A stretch of DNA of 63,758 nt, the filler included, from Reticulomyxa filosa (taxonomy: Eukaryota > Protista > Foraminifera), in assembly GCA_000512085.1 (NCBI GenBank). It is 15 parts of 15 records of this genome, joined end to end, with 100 filler letters (N's around TTAATTAATTAA, not from the genome) between each part and the next. Parts side by side here need not be neighbours in the genome. Positions count along the whole stretch, not along the records: positions 25,472 to 37,561 come from ASPP01027642.1; 14 more parts are not named here. One strand, given 5' to 3'. The translations under genes and the position numbers were made by a program. This document shows, piece by piece, positions 25,331-37,681 of the stretch. A model generated the notes under the pieces. It was given only the letters and a program-made list of their open reading frames with translations. It was not told where the DNA came from and did no database searches. How positions within the stretch are numbered: the stretch's first letter is position 1; the number at the start of each line of letters is the position of its first letter.

Positions 25331-25480
25331 CTGGAAGGAGGGGGGGGAGGGGGGGGGGGGAAGATATGTTCNNNNNNNNNNNNNNNNNNNNNNNNNNNNN
25401 NNNNNNNNNNNNNNNTTAATTAATTAANNNNNNNNNNNNNNNNNNNNNNNNNNNNNNNNNNNNNNNNNNNNAAAAAAAAT

Positions 25481-25513
<33 letters not shown>

Positions 25514-25570
25514 GTGTATACATATGATTCTTTTATTCTCAAAAAAAAAAAAAAAAAAAAAAAATTGAAG

Positions 25571-28500
25571 ATATTTCGAGTGCAAACCTGGTCATTCTTA
25601 TTTTGTCCGTGTGAGTGATGTGGATTCGATTGTGAAGACACGTGCGGAAATGGAAAAGGAAAATGGCAAGCAACCAGAGATGATTCCAGAGGACCTGGAA
25701 ATGGAACCGCCGGTGCAGGATCAGCAAGCAGTGCAATGCGGAGATCGTGTGACGTTGGTGAACAATCGCACCGGCGTGGTGCGTTTTGTGGGGGCCACTG
25801 ATTTTGCACTTGGCGAAATGTATGGAATCGAGCTGGATGCGAAATTGCCGATCGGTAACGACGGGTCATTTGGGAACATTCGCTACTTCAGCACCGACCA
25901 TGGAAGAGGAATATTTGTGCGAAGAGCAGCTATCATCGCTGTGGACCCATTGCCATTGCTCGAGGAAACCGCGGAATCCAAAGATGACGCAAGCGAGAAT
26001 GTCGACATATATCGTCAAAAAACAGTGATTGAAAAAGGCAGGTCCGACAATGACAACGACGAACAAATGGAACGAATGGGAGCAATTGAAGAGGATGAAG
26101 AAGAAGAAGAAGAAGAAGAAAAAGAAGAAGAAAAAGAAAAAGAAGAAGACGTTCGGGTTGAAGTTGATGCCTATGTCACTTTGATGAATGGACAAACAGG
26201 AGTTACGTTATTTATTTTATTTACTTGTAAACAAAAAATGTACATTAAATTGTATATACATATCGTCAATCCAACAACAATGATGGAATAGTTTGTTCGA
26301 TACATTGGAGTAACGGATTTTAGCAAAGGCGAAGAAGTCCTCGGCATCGAGTTGGATCAATGGGACGTGAATGGAAACGACGGATCCAAAAATGGCAAGA
26401 AATACTTTACTTGCAAGAACGGACGTGGCATATTTGTGAAGCAAGACAGCGTGACGCGAGTATTGAAGATTCCGGTCACGTTGAAACATTTGGAATTGAA
26501 GGACTTGATGAGTAGTGATGAGCGTGACGTAAGAACGGGGAAAAAGTTGGGCTTGGAAGAACGCATCAAAATATTGGAGGAAAAGGAAAAAGAGACACAA
26601 AGAGAACAAGAGTTGCAAAAGATGATTGAAAAATTACAAGTCGGCGACCGTGTTGAATTGGACCGATCTAGAACTGGTATTTGTTTGTTTATTTGAGTGT
26701 GATATGAAAAGAAAAGATGATTTATTTAATAATAATAAAAATAAAAAAAATAATAAAGGAACTGTTCGATATATCGCACCCGTGGAAATTGCAAGTGGTG
26801 GTGAAGCCATTGGTATCGAATTAGATAAGATTTCCCCACAGGGACACGACGGCAAAGGCAAATTTGCCACGAAAGATGGCTTTGGTATATTTGTGCGTGC
26901 CAAAGAGATCAAAAAAGTCCTTGTACGCCAGTCAATGGAATACGGAGCGAATGGTAGCAATGCGACAGGCCTTTTAACCAATGGAGAGAATATTGTTGTC
27001 CATGTCGACGATCGCGTTCGCATTCAAGGCGGTCGAACAGGTATCGTGCGTTACGTAGGCCCATTGGCTGGAATGGAAGACGCGAAGAAACAATACATTG
27101 GATTGGAGTTGGACGAATGGGATCCCAAGGCCACTTCGGGGACGTTTAAAGGAAAGGAATACTTCCGTGTCAATGCCAATAAGGGCGCCTTCATTGATGT
27201 CTTCCAAGTGGTGGAAAACCTTGGAAGCACAAATGTGACCGAAAAAAACCAAACACCGCCAAAGCCTTACGATGGCGACTTGAGTCGAGGACAGATGGTA
27301 AAGACGAAATACTATGGCATCGGCACGGTGATGTTTATGGGATTCGGGCACTTTAGCGATGGCGAAGTGATTGGATTGGAACTGAAACAATGGTGGCCCA
27401 ATGGAAGTGACGGGACAGTGGACAATAAGGAATATTTCAAATGTCCACAAGGACGTTCGTACTTTTGCTCTCGCAAAGATATTGAAAAGGTATTGACAGA
27501 GGCCGAAATCAAAGCCCTGAAAGAATCGGAAACAACAAAGAACAATGACACAAATAAACTCGTGGAAGACTGGCCCGAGCCAAAGACCAATCTGAAACGA
27601 ATGCCTGTAATCAAAGACCGCGTCCGAGTGTTTGATGGCCAAACCGGAGTAATTCAATTCATTGGGTCAGTCGACTTTGCAGAAGGAACATGGATCGGTC
27701 TCGTGTTGGACGATTTTTCCCCCAATGCAACTGACGGGACAGTGAAAAACAAGCCATACTTTCGAACAAAGCCTCAGCGTGGATTTTTCATCAAGCAAAA
27801 GTATTTGACGGAAAATCTGGGCTCCATTGTGAACACGCCTTTGGATCGTGTGGTGCTAGTGGACACCACGAATAATGAAGATGTCAAGTTCAAAGTGGGC
27901 GATCGCATTCAATTGGCGGAAGGCGGAACCGGAGTGGTGAAATACGTCGGCAGTGAGGCAGGCGAGGACGAAATGGAGCCAATTATCGGAGTCGAGTTGG
28001 ATACTTGGGATCCCAATGCCAACGATGGAAAGTTCAAAGGCAAGTCGATGTTCAAAACAAAGATGGGCAGAGGCTTGTTCACACGACGACAATCGATTAT
28101 GCAAGTGCTCCCACCCAAACTGGGACATTTGCCTCATTTGAAAGTGCTGCCTGACAAGGGCGATCGAGTGCGACTGCGATCGGGCGAGGAAGGCATTGTG
28201 CAGCGTATCGAAAAGTCTTTGACGGCGACAACCCCATCCAGTCAACAAGAGATCCAAATTGTCTTGTTGGACTCTTTCATTGGCGGTGACGGCAGCAAAC
28301 GAATTGTCAGGCTCTCCGATTTGAGTGAAAATCTCGGAAAGTATTACGACGAGCGTTATTCGAGTCTGCAAAACGAATCTTTGGAATTGAAAGTAGGCGA
28401 CCATGTGCGATTGCTGCGTGGCAAAACTGGCAAGATTAAATATATCGGCCCCGTTGGCGGAGAGATTGAAATGATTGGTATCGAATTAGATTCGTTCAAT

Positions 28501-31500
28501 CCAAGCGGACATAATGGCAAGGGCTATTTTGTGACGACCAATGGAAGAGGCTATTTCGCTAAGCGGTCCGACGTGGTTGGACTGATCGAACGACCAAATG
28601 ACACGGAGCAAGCCAAAATCCAAACGCAAAGATATCGACAAATGCGTGGATTGCAAAAAAGATTGTACAAAATCGAGCAAATCGAAAAAAACAACCATCT
28701 AGGAACGGAGTTAAATCGCAACCAAGGCCATTTCATGCAACGGAAAATGTCCATCCAGAGACAATTAAAGGACCTTACCGAGGCGTTCAACGCGAGCTAT
28801 CCTCTCGTCGAAATTGATGATGTGGTCAAACGTGAATCGGCCAATGGATCAAATGGACTCGCATTGGCTTCCGGACACGGAGCTTCACAAGTTAAAACGG
28901 GTGACAAGGTCATATTGGACAGTGGCGAAGTTGGCAAAATCATGTTTATTGGCTCTGTCAGCTTTGATGATCGCGAAATGCTTGGCATTTTATTGGACAA
29001 CTGGTCTCCCAATGGTCATAGTGGAACGGTCGATGGAACCCAATACTTTGTGGCGCCGGAAGGAAGGGGATTACTTGTGCCTTTCGACTCCATCGTGGGA
29101 CTGTTTGATGAGGAAAAAGAGGACAGCAACAAAACACCTGTGAAAAATGACCAAAGAAGAAGGTCGATGGAACTGGAGCCAGTTCGCGAAGAAAATGATG
29201 ATGACCTGAACAACGACAATGCCGACGATTTCAAAGATTTACCTGAATTGGTTGAGTTGCAAGAGGAAGAGGAACAGCATTTCTCTGATTTACCAAAAGT
29301 CGGCGAAGCAATTGCCTTTGGAGGTACAAACAAATATGTACATGTATATACATATATGTAAATATTTTTTTTTTTTTTTTTTTTGTTTATTGAAACTTTT
29401 CTTTCGTAAATACTTTTACTAATGCAAAACGATGTTTGCTTGCTTGTTGTAAAATAGGAAAATCTGGAGTGGTGAAGTACATAGGAAAGACCGAGTTTAG
29501 TAAAGACGAGCCAATGATAGGCATTGAATTGAATTCGTGGAGTGCCAATGCAACTGATGGCACATTGTTTGGAAGGAGATATTTCAATGCGGCTCCAGGC
29601 ACGGGATACTTTATTCGAAGACAGTCGTTTGCTTCATTGAAGGATATGATCAAGGACGACGATGCTCAGAAAATTCTGCGACAGGATTCACTGGCTCTGG
29701 AAAACTTTGATCCCAAATCTCTGGGCGTGTTTTACGAAAAGGGCGATCACATTGTGACGAGCGACGGATACAGCGGAAAGGTGATATTTACCGGCAAAGT
29801 GAAATTTGCTCCGCATGAAATGGTCGGATTGCATTTGGACGAATGGGACCCCAATGGTCACAATGGCACTGTCCGAGGTGAATCTACTTTGAGGTGCCTC
29901 CGGGAATGGGATGGTTTGTGCGTGCAGATAGTGTGTTGCAAGTCATTGAGAACGAGCAAGAATGGAAAAAAAGAGTAGAGGCAGAAAAAAAAAAAATAAA
30001 AAGTAAATACCGTATGAAGGTAGATGTTGGACAACGTGTGCAACTCAGAAATGGAATGCGCGGTTTGGTTCGCTTCTGTGATCGAACTGATTTCGCAAGT
30101 GGTGACAAATGGGTGGGATTGGAATTGGATGATTGGTATTACAATGCCCATGACGGAACCGTGAATAGCAAAACATACTTTACCACCAGCAAAGGACGAG
30201 GCTTTTTTGTGAAGCTCGAAGAGATTTCCATTGTCCTACGAAAAGAAGAAGAAAAGAGAGCGCAATCGCTGCGAGTGATGCCGGAATTGGGAGATCGCGT
30301 TCGAACTGTTCGTGGCAAAACGGGAGTGGTTAAGTTCATTGGAGAAGTCGATTTTTCCAGTGGCGCTTTGATCGGAGTGGAATTGGATCGTTGGAGTCCC
30401 AATGCTGGAGATGGGTCTGTCAATGGCGTCGAATATTTCAAGTGTTTGGTCGGACGTGGCTATTTCACCACATTGTCGCATTTGGTTGAAAACCTGGGCT
30501 CAACTCTGCCAGCTTCACTGCAGTCCAACGCAGGTAACGATGTCCAAGCGCAACAAAAGGAATTCCCACCTGATATCAAGCCCGGAGATAAAGTCAAATT
30601 GGCACAAGGAAAAGTTGGTGTTGTCCGTTATATCGGCACTACAGAAGAAACTGGAAATGAAGAAATTGTCGGAATTGAGTTTTGTTTTTTTTTCCGTCCT
30701 GCGTTTACTTTACTATTTGCATTATTTTCACATTTGTTTGTTTGTTTCTTTTTTTATTAAATACAATAAGATTGGATTCGTGGGACGCCAATGCTCGAGA
30801 TGGCACTCTTGGCTCCAAGAAACTCTTTGATGCCAACAAAGGAAAGGGATACTTCACTCGACGCAAGTCGATCGCCAATGTGGTGAAAACACACATCAAG
30901 GAAGGAGGGTTTGCAAAGTTGAAAAATTTAGTGGCGACGCCCAAATACAATGGCCAAATTGTAAAGATCCTTGGATACGCGCCTGAAAAGCAGCGATGGA
31001 AAGTCCGATTGCATGAGGACAAGAAAGACAACAAACTGTTGGGAGTGAAAGAAGAGAATTTGGCTCCAATCTTTGATTGGGAAGTGCCGCTTGAAACCGA
31101 CTTTAGAGCAGGTCATCTCACTCGAGCGCCTCTGGTGGGCGACCGTGTACGCACCAAAACAGGGAAAACGGGTATTGTTCGCTTTGTGGGTGAAACTGAA
31201 TTTGCACGGGACCAATTGAGCATCGGATTGGAGTTAGATCAATGGCATCCCTCTGCACACAACGGCACGGTTAATGACAAAGAATACTTTAAATGCAAAG
31301 AGGGACATGGCTATTTCGCCAGCATAGAACAGTTGGTGGCCAATTTGGGACAATTTGATGAAAGCGAACAGGTAGCACCCTTGCCACCCAAACCAAAGTT
31401 TGCAATTGGAGATAAAGTAAAACTGGCTCGAGGCAAGATTGGAGTGGTCAAATTCATCGGAGTCACTGAGTTTAGCAAAGGAGAAGAAATTGTTGGCTTG

Positions 31501-34500
31501 GAGTTATCCCAATGGACAGAAGGAGCGCACGATGGGAAAATTCGTGACAAACGCTATTTCAAGACAAAGCCTGGTCGCGGATATTTCACCCACAAAGGGT
31601 CCATTGTGAATTTGGTGTTGCCAGATGCAAATACAGCCAATCAAAGCAGCCGACTGCGGATCCGTCGTGAAATTAAAAAGACCAAACGAAGACTACATCA
31701 AATTGCAGTGTTGGAAACACGTCGCGAAAAAGGCGAAACGTTGACATCCAAACAACTCCAAAGAATTGCTAGCAAAGACGCATTGTCGAAAAAGTTGAAT
31801 GAATTGGAAAATGGAAACTTTGACTTTGAGGCTCAAGATAGAGAAAGAAAGGAAATGAGTCTTAAAAAGCGTAATCAACTGTTGGAAAGGAAGGCCACAA
31901 TGGATTTGGGCGCCAAAAAATGGACAGTACCGGTAAGCGTTGGTGATGCCGTACAATTGGAGAATGGAGCCACTGGTGTCGTGAAGTGGATTGGCAAAGT
32001 ACCATTTCTCACGGATGATGTACTTGGCTTGTTAATGGACACAACCAATCCCAACTACCACAATGGAGAGTTGGATGGAAAGGAATACTTCAAAACACCA
32101 AATGGCCGAGGATACTTTGCGTTGCAGGAAGAAATACAAAAGAACATGGGAACCACTAAGCGCACGCGACCAAAACACAATCAAGTATCAACAGAAACAT
32201 CTCAGAACAATGTAAACGTTGGTGATGCTGTCAAGACCATGCAGGGACCTGGGAAAGTGGTTTGGAAAGGCAACGTGATTGGAGAAGATGGGAAAACAGA
32301 GGAAGAAATGCTAGGAGTGGAATTGGAAGCCTTTGATCCCAATGCAAATGATGGCTCCATTCAAGGAACCAAGTACTTTGAAAGTAAACCTGGACATGCT
32401 ATTTTCACGCGTAGAGAGTCATTGCAATTGCCGTTATCAACCGACTTTGACCAAAATCAACCGAATGGTGTTGAATTTACTCTTGGAGATCGTGTTAAAC
32501 TCGACAATGGTTGTACTGGAGTTAAGAGACCATAAAAACATTGTGTGCATATATGTATATGTATGTATATGTGTATATGTATAGGTTGTCAGATTCGTGG
32601 GTCCAGTGACATTTGAACAAAAAGAAGAAACGATCGGCATTGAGTTGGACCAATGGTCACCGAATGGAAACAACGGCAGTGTAAATGGAATAAAGTGCTT
32701 TGACTGTCCAAACATGCGAGGATTCTTTTGTTTAAGGCATCAGATAGTCGAAAATATGGGCTCGACAATTCAACCATCGCACAAAGAAGAAGAGAAAGGA
32801 AATGATAGTGGCGACAAAGATTGGCTCAACGAAAAAGGCAAGGCAGTGAAAGTGGGAGATTACGTGGAGTTGGACCGTGGACGCACTGGTGTGGTCGAGT
32901 GGATCGGCAAAACCGATTTCAACGAAGAAGAAATGCTGGGCATCGAATTGGACGAGTGGTGGATTAATGGGCATGACGGAAGTAAAGATGGAAAGAGGTA
33001 CTTCCAATGCGCCGAAGGACACGGATACTTTGCCCATCGACGTTCGATTGCAGAAATAAAGAGGGATGAGTTGCCCAAAATCGACCCAGTGATCCAAGAG
33101 ACCAATCGTCGAGTCAATCGAATCGACCGCCTTCTCAAGCATTTGAGAGATATTCAAAGATACGAACAACGATTGGCCGGTGGCGATCGATTGCATAAAG
33201 GCCAAATCGAAAAAATTCAACGCAAAGATAAGTATAAAGAGGAATTGGAACAATTGCAGAAAGCCCCGCCACCCAATTTGCAAGATATACTTTTGGAGAG
33301 ACAATATGAAGACGACACCCAAGTCCAACTTGCGAATGACATACCGATACAAGACTTGAAAGAGACACAAGCAAGAGAAAGCGAAGAAGACGAAGATGAT
33401 GATGAAAATGATGATGAAAATGATGAAAATGAAGAAAATGAAAAAGAGCAGGGAGGAAACACGGAGAATAGTAACGAACAACAACAGGGCTCTTCTCACC
33501 GAAAGAGTATTGCCGAAAACCTGATCCAAGTCAACGTTGGAGATCGAGTTCGAATATTGGGCAACAAAACTGGAATAGTCAGATACTTTGGCAATGTCGA
33601 TTTTTCCAATGAAAAGTTGGTTGGCATTGAGTTGGACAGTTGGCATCCCAATGCAACTAATGGAACTGTTCGAGGAAAAACTTATTTCAAAGTTTAGTCT
33701 TTTTTTTATATTTTTTTTTTTTTTAACCTTATAATTAAAATGTTTTTCTTTATTAAATTTCATACAAATTGCTCTGCGGGTGGTCTTAGTGCGATCGTGG
33801 TCGTGGATTCTTTGCTAAAGAAAGCCTCATCCTTGAGAACCTTGGACGTGAGGTATGTGCTTATACAAATGCTTATCTCCTTTTGTTTTATTGGCATTAT
33901 TATTATTATTATTATTATATTGTTATTTGTTTGCATGTCTTTGAATCAGGACATGCAAAAAGAAACGACAAACGACGAGGAAGAAGGAACTCCACCCCCA
34001 CAAGCTCCCTTGCCCAAAATTCAATTCAAAATTGGCGATTATGTGAAGTTGGCTCGTGGAAAAACAGGTGTGGTAAAGTACATTGGAGAAACTGCATTCA
34101 CGCAAGGCGAAATTATTGGACTGGAGTTGGACACGTGGGACCCTCATGGACACAATGGGACAATCCGCAGCAGAAAATATTTCGAAGCCAACGAAGGACG
34201 CGGCTATTTCACGAAACGAGAACTGATATCCCAAGTCGTAATTCCTTTAGTTAAGCCGATTGACTTAAAGGCTGTCAATGTAACCTTCCAGTTGCGACCC
34301 TTTAAATTTGGAGATCGTGTGCAAATCAAAGAAAATGGAAGAACTGGTATCGTCAAATACGTCGGATTCCCATCATTTACTGACGGCGAAGTGATCGGAA
34401 TTGAGTTGGATGAGTGGTCCATGGATGCACACGACGGCATTGTCAACAACGAGGTCATTTTCGAGACATTCCCGGGACGTGGCACATTTGCAAGACGAGA

Positions 34501-35511
34501 CGATATTGAAAAGTATGATCCCGAGCAAAAGAAATTGGAAGAGGCCAAAATCCAATTAAAACTTGGTGATAAGATTAAACTTACCAATAACCGCACAGGA
34601 GTGGTAAAATATATTGGTGCAGATCATTTATCTGATCAAGAAATTATTGGAGTCGAATTAGGTTTTTTTTTTTTTTTTGTACTTGTTCAATGTATTATGT
34701 ATGCTAATGCATTTGAGCACAAACATTCTCTCTTTTTTTTTTGATCAGATGCATGGACCCCTGGCGCGCACGATGGTGTTTATAACAACTATCGATATTT
34801 CCAAGTATTGCTGTGTTTATATTTTATGTTTTGTGCTATCGTTTACAGAAATTGTGTTAACACAAATAGTGCCCAATTGGAAGAGGCATCTTTGCACGAA
34901 GATCGTCTGTGATTTCGGTAGAGCCTGTTCCAGAAGTTGAAACCAAATCAGACGACAGCGAAGATGAAAGAGATGAAATAAGATATGACATTGGTGACAG
35001 AGTGCAAATTGACACCGGAAAAAAAGGAGTTGCGTTGGGACATTTTGTCTCTTTGTTTATTCTTCTTATTATTGTTAAATGAAGCATTGCCATACATGAA
35101 CGGCAATAACTTAACAGACTATACGATACATTGGCAAAGACACTAAAGGAGAAGAAGTATATGGAATAGAATTGGATGAGAAAATACCCAAAGGAACAGA
35201 TGGACGTCATAACAACGTGAGATACTTTAGTTGCAGGTTTTCATTCATTTAAAAAAATATATATATATATATATGTATATAAATAATTGCTTACAAATAT
35301 AAATGTTTTGTATTATATCACTTTGTGAAAAAGACTTGGACGTGGTATATTTGTACGAAAGCACGTAATTGTAAGCATAGTGCAAGAAGATGATCTTCCA
35401 AAATTTGTCACAGGAGACAGAATTAAGTTAAGTCGCGGACGCTATGGTTACATCAAATATATCGAAGAAACAGAAGAAGGCGAGGTATTTGGCATTGAAA
35501 TCGGTATAAAT

Positions 35512-35542
<31 letters not shown>

Positions 35543-37514
35543 CTATGTAATATTTTCAATTTCTGTAACTTCTATTTTGATGGAGATGAGAGAAAGGAAA
35601 GAATTCATTAAAAAGTAATATGAAATAATATTTGTATGTGTGCGTAATGAATCTATATAGATGTGTGGGGCGGAGACATAGCCAATGAGGAAGCAGGAAG
35701 AACAAGACGCTTCAGTGTGAAACACGGATACCCAATAACGCGATCTCGTTCGAGTATGACAGGGAATTTATTGTCTCCAGAACTTGATGAGACCGCTCCT
35801 TCCACGCCCACGGATGACAAGAAAGAAAGCAATGCAAAAGGATTTTCGTTGGGAGAGACAGTGGAATTGACGAATGGATTAATCGGAACAATACGATTTA
35901 TTGGACCAATGTACTTTGCCAAGGACGAGGAATGGATTGGTGTTGAGCTCCACGATGGATGGGGCAAGCATGACGGAGCGTATCAAGGAGTGAGATACTT
36001 CACTTGTCCTCCCAAGCGTGGTGTGTTTGTCAAAGAAGTAAAACGTCTCCGAGAAGACGATCCTAGTCGACAGTACCTGAAACGCCGATGTCCAGAATGT
36101 GAAGGCCAGTTTTTGAAGTTGCGTAACCCTGCGAAAGCCTATCGAGGTATGGGCATGGTGTGCGATCGTTGTCATCGTCACGGAACCCAATTCTCGGAAA
36201 ATGATTGGTTTTTCCAATGTTCGAAATGTGAACAAATCGACCTGTGCATGGACTGTATGCTAAAACTGCATCCCTCAGAGCCTCAACGCGAAGATGACGT
36301 CGCTGAAGTCCGGGCCAAATGTCGTCTACTCGATGGACAATGGGTGTTTGAAGAAATTGATGTGGACGACGCCGTGTCTGAATTGTCCCAGAAAGATCAG
36401 CAAACAAAAGGAGAAGAACCACAAACAGCACCAGCAACGACAACAACCGAAGCACAAAAACCACAACAAAGTGTTATTTCCACTATCATTGAAGAAGACA
36501 AAGAAGATGACAATGATTTTGAACCTCTTGCTCCAAAGACATTACAGGCGCAAGTGTCATCTAAATTCCATTTATCTGAAGTTCTTTATTTTTTCTTTTA
36601 TTTTTTTTTTTTTTTTTGCTATACAACTCCAGTATAAATAATCCAAATTTCAAACTAAAATAATAATAATAATGGATAGATCAGGGCAGTCTTCGACTTC
36701 TTCGATCGTGACGAAGATGGGCTGCTGCACACAACAGATATTGACGATATGTGGGCTGCATCAAGGCATGAATTGGATCGAGAATACTTTATTTCTCCTT
36801 TAAGTTTTGAACAATTTCAAAGAGCATGGAATACCGTGTCCGATGATGCCAGCCAAAATCTATTTCAATACCTCGAATTACACAAAAACAAGCTGGTACA
36901 GATAAACTTTCTGTCTTTCCAAAAATAAGTATATGTATATGTAATGTATGTGTACGTATACACGCTCACACCGCATGAAGTGCTTTTGTTGTTGTTCGTT
37001 CGTTTATACTTTAAAAAAAAACTAGGCCAAAGGTGGTCGTAAGTCAATGGAATTTTTGGAAAAAGTACGAGATATATTTGAATACTTTGACAGAAATGTA
37101 GACGGTACATTGACAATTGAGGACATGGCGCGCATAGTCCCATTAATAAGCGTATCACTTGGAGTAGATCAGGGAAAGAAATGGTTCGACCCTCCTTGCG
37201 ACTTTATCAAGTTCCTGTCTCGAATGCAGGCATTGGGTGAAGATGTCACAAAACCGATCATCGATCGCTTAGTCCATCACATGAAGCTGCGTGTCAAAGA
37301 CGTGTTTTTCTTATTTACACATGGCACACATGAAATGATGACAGAGCAAGAATTCTTACAAATGTATGCATATGCATTGAAGAAGGAATTGGATTGGCGA
37401 AGAGTTTATCGCTTCCCGTGTTCACAGTCCGAATTTGTCGAAAAATGGAATCATTTGGGAGTCTTTGAACAGCACGGAATTTTGATGGAAACAGAAAAAC
37501 GACTGACAAAAGAA
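25571..37514 (+). CDS. Giant tandem CAP-Gly protein (~28 domains) with helical hairpins, a ZZ-like zinc finger and EF-hands; truncated at both ends
   Basis: Repeated xGDxVxL..GxTGxV[KR][FY]xG..F....IG[IVL]ELD.W.PNxxDG....YF....GRGxF units across consecutive + strand exons. The last unit has canonical WIGVELHDGWGKHDG..GVRYFTC..GVFV. It is followed by CxxC..CxxC..CxxC..LCxxC and the EF loops DRDEDGLL and DRNVDGTL. Confidence 0.93.
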
Positions 37515-37520
37515 GTTTTG

Positions 37521-37554
<34 letters not shown>

Positions 37555-37681
37555 GGTTTTTNNNNNNNNNNNNNNNNNNNNNNNNNNNNNNNNNNNNNNN
37601 NNNNNTTAATTAATTAANNNNNNNNNNNNNNNNNNNNNNNNNNNNNNNNNNNNNNNNNNNNAAAAAAAAAAAAAAAAAAAG

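What the first reader, a model, noticed from the sequence alone, without database searches (positions are those of the whole stretch)
25571..37514. Giant protein with about 28 tandem CAP-Gly domains: candidate undescribed microtubule scaffold
Seen in sequence: manual splicing yields 26 well-formed CAP-Gly domains, 2 degenerate ones (~28150 and ~35400-35750) and the tail of another at 25571 (YFECKPGHSYFVR). The gene is cut at both ends and encodes more than 3000 aa. Established: the characterised CAP-Gly proteins p150glued, CLIP-170, TBCB/TBCE, KIF13B, CAP350 and CYLD carry 1-3 copies and bind tubulin or EB tails. Inference: this valency could bundle or cross-link microtubules, or organise the helical tubulin filaments and fast transport of foraminiferan reticulopodia. 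I know of no described protein with this architecture.
Basis: partly seen in the sequence, partly recalled or inferred. Interest (0 to 1): 0.95.

Follow-up and report, generated by a model that had tools for sequence, protein, structure and literature searches.

The report
Foraminiferan giant protein, 29 CAP-Gly domains
This contig of the foraminifer Reticulomyxa filosa carries one very long gene whose product strings together about 29 CAP-Gly domains (the module that other cells use once to three times to grasp microtubule and EB1 tails), the highest count found among 1.84 billion representative proteins, but its binding motif is altered and its function is untested.

Summary
The + strand of 25571-37514 encodes 26 well-formed CAP-Gly domains, two degenerate ones (28159-28338, 35407-35743) and the tail of another at 25571.

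The piece is Reticulomyxa filosa contig ASPP01027642.1. GenBank already holds it as two adjacent 'hypothetical proteins', RFI_31450 (2604 aa) and RFI_31451 (992 aa). I find these are most likely one gene. A 63-nt microexon (33790-33852) completes the domain that model 1 truncates and joins in frame to model 2, and homologues span the junction.

My model has 16 exons, 14 GT-AG introns and about 3,520 codons. It is cut at both contig ends and has one apparent 1-nt indel near 29880.

A profile search of 1.84 billion representative proteins puts this gene first with 24 domains. The next best has 14, and the listed hits outside this family's multi-domain set mostly have 2-4.

It belongs to a foraminiferal family with several R. 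filosa paralogues and relatives in Nonionella and Bolivina transcriptomes. Those relatives continue into a Cys-rich ZZ-like finger, EF-hands, RPEL repeats and a coiled coil.

Two caveats apply. The tubulin-tail motif GKNDG is replaced by N-[A/G]-[H/N]-D-G in all but one domain, and half the domains are acidic. Microtubule binding is therefore plausible but unproven. I found no transcript data and no literature on it.

The parts
25571..37514 (+). One gene, 16 exons, cut at both contig ends. Exons: 25571-26201, 26292-26676, 26759-29323, 29458-29879 / 29882-30678 (1-nt indel between these two blocks), 30771-32520, 32585-33691, 33790-33852, 33950-34661, 34749-34804, 34870-35028, 35118-35236, 35334-35503, 35661-36580, 36680-36895, 37026-37514.
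   Evidence: There are 14 GT-AG introns of 64-157 nt, each chosen because it restores the CAP-Gly consensus. All exon phases agree. Positional homologues tile the whole span. GenBank models were mapped.
25571..25610 (+). CAP-Gly 1, C-terminal tail only (YFECKPGHSYFVR). The rest lies off the contig.
   Evidence: HMM positions 51-64; AG acceptor at 25569-25570
25740..25925 (+). CAP-Gly 2, motif IGNDG
26163..26447 (+). CAP-Gly 3, split by intron 26202-26291, motif NGNDG
26640..26904 (+). CAP-Gly 4, split by intron 26677-26758, motif QGHDG
27004..27195 (+). CAP-Gly 5, motif KATSG
27289..27477 (+). CAP-Gly 6, motif NGSDG
27604..27807 (+). CAP-Gly 7, motif NATDG, keeps the canonical Trp
27895..28092 (+). 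CAP-Gly 8, motif NANDG
28159..28338 (+). CAP-Gly 9, degenerate (the N-terminal strand and LLDSFIGGDG...ENLG remain)
   Evidence: 8.5 bits, N-terminal part only
28393..28566 (+). CAP-Gly 10, motif SGHNG
28600..28800 (+). Helical insert 1 (shared motif R..R..L..I..E....G..L...Q...K)
   Evidence: The three inserts align with 12 invariant columns. No Pfam family matched.
28897..29079 (+). CAP-Gly 11, motif NGHSG
29299..29624 (+). CAP-Gly 12, split by intron 29324-29457, motif NATDG
29742..29929 (+). CAP-Gly 13, motif NGHNG, interrupted by the frame change
29879..29882 (+). Apparent 1-nt deletion. The frame changes between ...GTVRGE and IYFEVPPGMGWFVRAD, and no GT-AG intron fits.
   Evidence: DNA read. 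Paralogues P0001, P0003 and P0004 run straight through this site with one residue between the two blocks.
30026..30217 (+). CAP-Gly 14, motif NAHDG, keeps the canonical Trp
30281..30472 (+). CAP-Gly 15, motif NAGDG
30584..30867 (+). CAP-Gly 16, split by intron 30679-30770, motif NARDG
30868..31128 (+). Conserved 87-aa non-CAP-Gly insert (AKLKNLVATPKYNGQIVKILGYAPEKQRWKVRL...VKEENL), unassigned
   Evidence: Conserved in paralogue P0001. No Pfam hit. The Atlas search returned only unnamed clusters.
31129..31323 (+). CAP-Gly 17, motif SAHNG
31405..31596 (+). CAP-Gly 18, motif GAHDG
31642..31836 (+). Helical insert 2
31939..32130 (+). CAP-Gly 19, motif NYHNG
32218..32418 (+). CAP-Gly 20, motif NANDG
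32482..32737 (+). CAP-Gly 21, split by intron 32521-32584, motif NGNNG
32852..33040 (+). CAP-Gly 22, motif NGHDG
33083..33277 (+). Helical insert 3, followed by an acidic low-complexity run at 33377-33448
33536..33822 (+). CAP-Gly 23, motif NATNG, split by intron 33692-33789. GenBank model RFI_31450 stops inside it at 33697.
33790..33852 (+). 63-nt microexon (CDRGRGFFAKESLILENLGRE), phase 0 at both ends, with GT-AG introns on both sides. It joins the two GenBank models into one frame.
   Evidence: DNA read. Splice enumeration. tblastn HSP of paralogue P0001 at 33790-33846. Homologues P0025, P0026 and P0009 span the junction.
34031..34222 (+). CAP-Gly 24, motif HGHNG
34310..34501 (+). CAP-Gly 25, motif DAHDG
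34562..34902 (+). CAP-Gly 26, split by introns 34662-34748 and 34805-34869, motif GAHDG
34990..35361 (+). CAP-Gly 27, split by introns 35029-35117 and 35237-35333, motif KGTDG
35407..35743 (+). CAP-Gly 28, degenerate, split by intron 35504-35660 (the motif position reads DIANE)
35849..36037 (+). CAP-Gly 29. It is the only copy with both a canonical Trp and GKHDG. The Lys is P or Q in homologues. With the adjacent finger, this is the best-conserved part across the homologues aligned.
36089..36271 (+). Cys-rich, ZZ-like zinc finger (CPEC...CDRC...CSKC...CMDC..H)
   Evidence: Pfam gives only weak hits: ZZ at E 0.09 and DnaJ_CXXCXGXG at 0.02, and zf-KKT2_KKT3 'weak'. The Cys pattern is conserved in homologues.
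36680..36895 (+). EF-hand-like module 1 (loop DRDEDGLLHTTD at 36704-36739)
   Evidence: EF-hand_6 17.1 bits, below cut-off, for this exon alone; coordinates
37026..37514 (+). EF-hand-like modules 2-3 (loop DRNVDGTLTIED at 37089-37124). This is the last exon before the contig end.
   Evidence: EF-hand_6 30.6 bits against a cut-off of 25 in P0013. It is 73% identical to paralogue RFI_32347, which continues for about 600 aa.

Best explanation
The contig carries one gene, not the two annotated. It belongs to a foraminifer-specific family and encodes a protein of at least about 3,520 residues. About 29 CAP-Gly domains are spaced every ~120 residues. Three related helical inserts and one small unassigned domain interrupt the array. 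A Cys-rich ZZ-like finger and EF-hand-like modules follow it. In homologues the chain goes on into RPEL (G-actin-binding) repeats and a coiled coil.

The most likely role is a polyvalent cytoskeletal scaffold. Many weak CAP-Gly contacts with C-terminal tails of tubulin, or of tubulin-associated proteins, would add up to high avidity along or between microtubules. The C-terminal module would add regulation (Ca2+) and possibly a link to actin.

Shown here: the domain count, the fold, the single reading frame, the family and the unmatched valency. Inferred: any binding to microtubules, the Ca2+ and actin links, and expression in R. filosa.
For: Domain identity and count.

Fold. pLDDT is 87.4, and single domains superpose on CLIP-170 CAP-Gly1 at 1.1-1.4 A rmsd.

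One gene:
- A microexon with GT-AG on both sides completes domain 23 and keeps the frame.
- All 16 exon phases are consistent over about 3,520 codons.
- The Nonionella transcript protein P0025 and the R. filosa paralogue models P0026 and P0009 align collinearly across the GenBank gene boundary.
- Positional homologues at 48% identity or more tile the whole contig.

Valency: this gene ranks first of 10,255 hits in 1.84 billion representatives with 24 stretches. The next has 14.

Family and C-terminal module. RPEL passes Pfam's cut-off in P0025 and P0163.

Expression of relatives: homologues come from foraminiferal transcriptome sets, namely Nonionella, Bolivina, Ammonia and Elphidium.

Position 3 of the motif (Asn or His), which H-bonds the EE[Y/F] tail according to PMC3806363, is kept in most copies, as are D-G and the glycine scaffold.
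Against: - The Lys of GKNDG is absent in 27 of 28 scorable domains. The one Lys (domain 29) is P or Q in homologues.
- A one-residue insertion and a new Trp sit beside the motif, and the canonical Trp is kept in only 3 of 17 unsplit domains.
- Domain pI ranges from 4.3 to 9.9 with mean net charge near 0, and the whole protein is net -79. The tubulin tails it would have to bind are acidic.
- No R. filosa RNA or read data could be listed.
- One frame-breaking indel sits inside domain 13.
- The RPEL and coiled-coil parts are seen only in homologues, not on this contig. In the R. filosa paralogue RPEL scores just under cut-off, 21.5 against 23 bits.
Confidence: 0.55

Rival explanations
1. It is a real single giant protein, but the variant CAP-Gly domains have a ligand other than tubulin or EB EEY/F tails. 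That ligand could be other C-terminal peptides, ubiquitin or proline-rich partners as for CYLD's CAP-Gly domains, or the protein's own segments. The protein would then be a scaffold unrelated to microtubule bundling.
For: - Loss of the motif Lys, the shifted Trp and the one-residue insertion.
- Many domains are acidic and the protein is net -79.
- CYLD CAP-Gly3 is solved bound to ubiquitin (7owc and 7owd), which shows the fold can take other ligands.
Against: - The closest structures by sequence and fold are the tail-binding CLIP and p150 domains.
- Position 3 (N or H), D-G and the Phe residues of the groove are mostly kept.
- About half the domains are basic.
Confidence: 0.3
2. These are two separate neighbouring genes, as annotated in GenBank: RFI_31450 ending at 33697 and RFI_31451 starting at 33869.
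For: The GenBank gene calls. There is a stop codon at 33695-33697 in the frame of exon 7 and an ATG at 33869.
Against: - Model 1 ends in the middle of a CAP-Gly domain.
- Model 2 begins with a hydrophobic low-complexity peptide translated from T-rich, ATT-repeat sequence.
- A phase-0 microexon restores the domain and the frame.
- Three homologues span the boundary.
Confidence: 0.1
3. It is a decaying pseudogene copy of a multi-copy family, as marked by the frameshift in domain 13.
For: The 1-nt frame break near 29880. Several paralogues exist that could cover its function.
Against: - There are no other stops or frame breaks in about 3,520 codons.
- Every intron keeps GT-AG and its phase.
- The break sits at a short A run (gaa|atc) in a fragmented draft assembly, a place where a one-base miscall would be easy (inference).
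Confidence: 0.07
4. It is an assembly artefact: paralogous CAP-Gly fragments were wrongly concatenated into an over-long array.
For: The assembly is fragmented and the family is multi-copy.
Against: - All domains are distinct, 27-60% identical.
- There is no DNA-level repeat.
- Domain order is mirrored over more than 1,500 residues by independent paralogue contigs and by an environmental homologue.
Confidence: 0.02

Closest known systems
CLIP-170 / restin (CLIP1), CLIP-115, CLIPR-59
   Same: They are the best sequence and fold matches for single domains: E about 1e-17 to 1e-18, and rmsd 1.1-1.4 A to CLIP-170 CAP-Gly1. The domains are tandem, with a Cys-rich metal-binding element and a coiled coil elsewhere in the family. 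GenBank calls one paralogue fragment 'restin-like'.
   Different: The CLIPs have two CAP-Gly domains, not about 29. They carry GKNDG with Lys and flanking basic Ser-rich regions. Here the motif is N[AG][HN]DG and the protein is acidic. No CCHC zinc knuckles or ETF tail were seen; the family's C-terminus is a coiled coil ending in ...QMCK or ...ARKK.
Dynactin p150Glued CAP-Gly
   Same: A similar level of sequence match (E about 1e-17) and fold match (3tq7, 2hl5, 1txq).
   Different: It is a single N-terminal domain in a dynactin subunit, with canonical GKNDG. Nothing else in the architecture is shared.
CYLD (three CAP-Gly domains)
   Same: It has the highest copy number among characterised proteins, and its CAP-Gly domains have non-tubulin ligands. 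That is a precedent for divergent specificity (7owc and 7owd).
   Different: CYLD is a deubiquitinase with only three copies, and its match is weaker (E about 1e-10).
Other multi-CAP-Gly proteins in public data: environmental P0019 (13-14 domains), metagenomic P0165 (14 domains, ARHDG type), R. filosa paralogues RFI_03278, RFI_06887 and RFI_05929/05930
   Same: They are arrays of CAP-Gly domains at a ~100-130-residue period. P0019 and the RFI paralogues are collinear with this gene and share its motif variant.
   Different: All are shorter or fragmentary, and none is characterised. P0165 has a different motif with a basic residue at position 2, and it comes from an unidentified organism on a 170-kb contig.
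Spectraplakins / GAS2-type microtubule-actin cross-linkers (a functional analogy only)
   Same: If the homologues' RPEL repeats bind actin, the family would combine a microtubule-side module, EF-hands and an actin-side module in one giant chain.
   Different: There is no homology: no calponin-homology, spectrin, plakin or GAR domains. RPEL binds G-actin rather than F-actin (established knowledge, not tested here).

Membership tests
CAP-Gly domain (Pfam PF01302) | Sequence match above Pfam's gathering score | tested here: met
   271.6 bits for ORF 26626-29358, 822.8 bits for P0018 and 258.8 bits for P0013, against a cut-off of 26.5
CAP-Gly domain (Pfam PF01302) | The CAP-Gly fold (a small beta structure with conserved glycines) | tested here: met
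   AF2 pLDDT 87.4. Foldseek TM 0.88-0.90 and rmsd 1.1-1.4 A to 3rdv and 2qk0. Four invariant Gly columns.
Tail-binding (EEY/F-recognising) CAP-Gly subclass | GKNDG motif on the loop flanking the peptide groove (PMC3806363) | tested here: not met
   Only domain 29 has GKHDG. The other 27 read N/S/G/K-[A/G]-[H/N/T]-[D/N/S]-G with a one-residue insertion. Asn or His at position 3 is mostly kept.
Tail-binding (EEY/F-recognising) CAP-Gly subclass | Conserved aromatic residues of the groove (Phe, and the Trp before G-V-E-L-D) | tested here: inconclusive
   Phe is mostly kept. The canonical Trp is kept in 3 of 17 unsplit domains. A new Trp after L-D-x is present in most copies.
Tail-binding (EEY/F-recognising) CAP-Gly subclass | Binding to alpha-tubulin, EB1 or CLIP C-terminal tails | not testable with these tools
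CLIP-170 / restin family | Two N-terminal CAP-Gly domains with Ser-rich basic regions, a long coiled coil, and C-terminal CCHC zinc knuckles with an ETF tail | tested here: not met
   There are 29 domains and an acidic chain. A ZZ-like finger replaces CCHC knuckles. The homologues' C-termini are not aromatic.
ZZ-type zinc finger (PF00569) | Pfam match above cut-off, with the Cys/His ligand pattern | tested here: inconclusive
   ZZ scores 13 bits against a cut-off of 21.4, E 0.09. Eight Cys in four CxxC pairs are conserved in homologues. The AF2 model of this region failed, pLDDT 36.
EF-hand | Pfam match above cut-off, with a 12-residue Ca2+ loop | tested here: met
   EF-hand_6 scores 30.6 bits against a cut-off of 25 in P0013. 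The loops are DRDEDGLLHTTD and DRNVDGTLTIED, and both end in Asp rather than the usual Glu. Ca2+ binding itself was not tested.
RPEL repeat (PF02755) | Present in this gene | not testable with these tools
   The contig ends before the region. RPEL passes cut-off in homologues P0025 (34.6 bits) and P0163 (31.7 bits). It is just below cut-off in R. filosa paralogue P0164, 21.5 against 23 bits.

The most novel reading that the evidence does not exclude
Foraminifera evolved their own class of giant polyvalent microtubule-associated proteins. An array of about 30 re-tuned CAP-Gly domains would read the tails of the lineage's unusual tubulins. The array could zipper or store tubulin polymers (microtubules, helical filaments, paracrystals). 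EF-hand, RPEL and coiled-coil modules would couple it to Ca2+ and actin. Such a protein would be a direct molecular handle on the exceptionally fast assembly, disassembly and transport seen in reticulopodia.
Probability: 0.2. Interest if true: 0.85.

Novelty: new variant of a known kind. Interest (0 to 1): 0.62.

Why it matters
Reticulomyxa and other foraminifera are classic examples of extreme microtubule behaviour: very rapid length changes, conversion to helical filaments and fast bidirectional transport. Divergent tubulin has been discussed as a cause (PMC4990898). I found no paper in the searchable library that connects CAP-Gly proteins with foraminifera.

This gene gives a concrete and unusually striking candidate. 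It has the highest CAP-Gly valency in 1.84 billion representative proteins. It is conserved as a family in foraminifera, and its binding loop is systematically altered.

It also corrects the public annotation: two 'hypothetical proteins' are one gene, and several introns are read through. Finally, it offers a natural experiment on how avidity from many weak tail-binding modules can be used.

Tried and rejected
- The look-up of sequencing runs on 27000-33000 listed no run (none was listed, which does not mean none exists). Read laying was therefore not used, and there is no transcript evidence for R. filosa.
- The AlphaFold2 model of the C-terminal 488 residues, built on only 8 aligned sequences, failed (pLDDT 36). 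No fold is claimed for the finger or the EF region.
- The 87-aa insert at 30868-31128 and the three helical inserts gave no Pfam family. The Atlas search returned only unnamed clusters.
- Minus-strand ORFs up to 343 aa have no Pfam match and lie antisense to coding exons, so they were rejected as genes.
- Recent DNA-level repeat expansion was rejected.
- The joined spliced protein was neither searched nor folded. All searches used single exons by reference or the stored GenBank models P0018 and P0013.
- Literature searches for CAP-Gly with Reticulomyxa, foraminifera or the locus tags returned nothing. The R. filosa genome paper (Glockner et al. 2014) is not held, so I cannot exclude that it mentions the family.

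Full report
WHAT THE PIECE IS. Places 25472-37561 are the whole of Reticulomyxa filosa contig ASPP01027642.1 (12,090 nt, assembly GCA_000512085.1). The protein RFI_31451 maps to it exactly, and the record lists two + strand genes:
- RFI_31450 (P0018, 2604 aa, partial), window 25472-33697.
- RFI_31451 (P0013, 992 aa, partial), window 33869-37514.
Both are 'hypothetical protein' in GenBank. The sequence is therefore public, but I found no paper naming these genes or linking CAP-Gly proteins to foraminifera. The R. filosa genome paper itself is not held in the library.

CHECK OF THE OBSERVATION. Pfam CAP_GLY matches every long + strand ORF. It finds 21 stretches in P0018 and 6 in P0013.

A profile iterated on the piece's own stop-to-stop fragments found 38 segments. 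They assemble into 29 units:
- a C-terminal tail at 25571-25610, right after an AG acceptor;
- 26 well-formed domains;
- two degenerate ones, 28159-28338 and 35407-35743.

The domains are only 27-60% identical to one another, and there is no DNA tandem repeat of the domain period. AlphaFold2 of domains 5-8, with an alignment of 37 four-domain stretches, gave mean pLDDT 87.4 and pTM 0.60. Foldseek superposes single domains on CLIP-170 CAP-Gly1 (3rdv, 2qk0) at 1.1-1.4 A with TM 0.88-0.90. The Spt5 hits in the same list have rmsd above 17 A and reflect only tandem small beta domains.

GENE STRUCTURE. I enumerated GT-AG introns that keep the frame and restore the CAP-Gly consensus. This gave 14 introns of 64-157 nt and 16 exons whose phases agree throughout. 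About 3,514-3,520 codons lie in the contig, roughly 87% of it.

The GenBank models read through several introns. Examples are 'LLCLYFIGIFARR' and 'VALGHFVSLFILLII' in P0013.

The contig begins inside a homopolymer-rich intron. It ends 47 nt after a GT that follows exon 16, so the gene is cut at both ends.

One defect remains. Inside domain 13 the frame changes between ...GTVRGE and IYFEVPPGMGWFVRAD at about 29879-29882, and no intron is possible there. Three paralogues read straight through this place with exactly one residue between the two blocks. The site is therefore a 1-nt indel in this contig. Because it is the only break in about 3,520 codons, I take it as more likely an assembly error than a real lesion.

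ONE GENE, NOT TWO. GenBank model 1 stops at 33697 in the middle of domain 23. After 33691 comes GTTTAGT...CTTAG. Then comes a 63-nt exon (33790-33852) encoding CDRGRGFFAKESLILENLGRE, which is the missing end of the domain plus the ENLG tail seen after many copies. Then comes GTATGTG...ATCAG, and then 33950 in the frame of model 2. Model 2's own start (MLISFCFIGIIIII...) is translated from T-rich and ATT-repeat sequence.

Independent homologues span this boundary collinearly:
- the Nonionella stella transcriptome protein P0025 (464-825 on 33536-34801, then on to 37505);
- the R. filosa paralogue model P0026 (32633-34852);
- the R. filosa paralogue model P0009 (33065-36094).
Positional homologues at 48% identity or more tile the entire contig in order, which also argues against mis-assembly.

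I did not search or fold the joined spliced protein. All database work used single exons by reference or the stored GenBank models.

HOW UNUSUAL IT IS. A profile of 17 unsplit domains was run against 1.84 billion representative proteins and gave 10,255 hits. P0018 from this contig is first with 24 stretches. Next come an environmental protein P0019 (14), the R. filosa paralogue RFI_03278 (13) and RFI_05929 (10). A run of foraminiferal or unnamed environmental proteins with 5-8 follows, and most of the remaining listed hits have 2-4.

A cluster member, P0165, from an unidentified organism on a 170-kb metagenomic contig, has 14 domains. With model 2 added, this gene has about twice the valency of anything else found. 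The profile was built from this gene's own domains, which favours its relatives in score. Even so, the count of stretches would still have brought up any protein with many canonical domains.

THE FAMILY. At least three other R. filosa loci (RFI_03278, RFI_06887, RFI_05929/05930) cover the same stretch, 29885-32523, at 55-63% identity. These are paralogues, not alleles, and they too are split into several gene models. One fragment is labelled 'restin-like'.

The part after the array is conserved at 40-73% in Bolivina (P0163), in Nonionella (P0025) and in R. filosa RFI_32347 (P0164). It comprises domain 29, a Cys-rich ZZ-like finger and EF-hand-like modules. P0164 continues for another 600 residues beyond the point where this contig ends. 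That stretch holds more EF-like repeats, RPEL-like motifs and a coiled coil. RPEL passes Pfam's cut-off in P0025 and P0163.

P0025 and P0163 are identical over their shared C-terminal parts although they are attributed to two species. They should therefore count as one source.

HOW IT MAY WORK, AND THE CAVEATS. Solved CAP-Gly domains bind C-terminal EE[Y/F] tails through a groove flanked by the GKNDG loop, whose Asn hydrogen-bonds the tail (PMC3806363).

In this protein the HMMER alignment to CLIP and p150 chains shows ...LDEW-x-P-N-A-H-D-G where they have ...LDEP-x-G-K-N-D-G. The differences are:
- a one-residue insertion;
- Gly changed to Asn;
- Lys changed to Ala or Gly;
- Asn kept, or changed to His.
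A new Trp follows L-D-x, while the canonical Trp survives in 3 of 17 unsplit copies. Only domain 29 reads GKHDG, and its Lys is Pro or Gln in homologues.

Domain pI runs from 4.3 to 9.9, and the whole chain is net -79. That is not what one expects of a module that binds acidic tubulin tails everywhere along its length.

My best reading, at confidence 0.55, is a polyvalent cytoskeletal scaffold in which a subset of re-tuned domains bind tails of tubulin or its partners with high avidity. The main rival, at 0.3, is that the variant domains have another ligand.

The spacing of about 120 residues per unit, with 20-45-residue linkers, would let successive domains reach successive 8-nm tubulin dimers. 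The ENLG tail is modelled as an extra strand. The spacing argument is an inference only.

VERDICT. The architecture is real and exceptional in valency. It is already deposited but mis-annotated and uncharacterised. The functional idea is reasonable but rests on a binding motif that this family has changed. I rate it a new variant of a known kind, with interest 0.62.

Noticed in passing
window 29879-29882: There is a single 1-nt frame break inside CAP-Gly domain 13, at a short A run. Three paralogues are continuous here. It is probably an indel error in the draft assembly.
   Followed up: partly
window 33697-33950, 34805-35117 and others: The GenBank models RFI_31450 and RFI_31451 split one gene. 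They miss a 63-nt microexon and translate through several introns, which gives hydrophobic junk peptides.
   Followed up: yes
window 28600-28800, 31642-31836, 33083-33277: Three related helical inserts of about 65 aa follow domains 10, 18 and 22. They share 12 invariant positions (R..R..L..I..E....G..L...Q...K...L..L). No Pfam family matches, and the role is unknown.
   Followed up: partly
window 30868-31128: A conserved 87-aa non-CAP-Gly module (AKLKNLVATPKYNGQIVKILGYAPEKQRWKVRL...VKEENL) lies between domains 16 and 17 and is also present in the paralogues. It has no Pfam match. The Atlas neighbours are unnamed clusters, one of which is recorded as eukaryotic, commonest diatoms.
   Followed up: partly
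P0025 (Nonionella stella) and P0163 (Bolivina argentea): Two EukProt proteins attributed to different foraminiferal species are identical over their shared C-terminal parts, at least 450 residues. This suggests cross-contamination or a shared source in those transcriptome sets.
   Followed up: no
L002:6001-10293 (ENA ERZ26695579, 170-kb contig): An uninterrupted 1430-aa ORF with 14 CAP-Gly domains of an 'ARHDG' motif type, from an unidentified organism. It is a second, independent high-valency CAP-Gly array outside the family described here.
   Followed up: partly
P0066, P0073/P0168, P0107 (Bolivina, Elphidium, Nonionella): Foraminifera also have four-domain CAP-Gly proteins that mostly keep the canonical Lys (GKNNG or GKHNG; all four copies in P0066, two of four in P0073 and P0107). 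The lineage therefore keeps Lys-bearing CAP-Gly domains alongside the variant type.
   Followed up: no
window 36704-36739 and 37089-37124: Both EF-hand loops end in Asp instead of the usual Glu at position 12. The EF-like unit, with a conserved 'PPC.F..F' segment, is repeated at least three or four times in the paralogue RFI_32347.
   Followed up: no
window 25472-25570, 33698-33789, 36585-36617, 37515-37561: Introns and contig ends are rich in long A/T homopolymers and simple repeats. This probably explains why the assembly breaks inside this gene.
   Followed up: no
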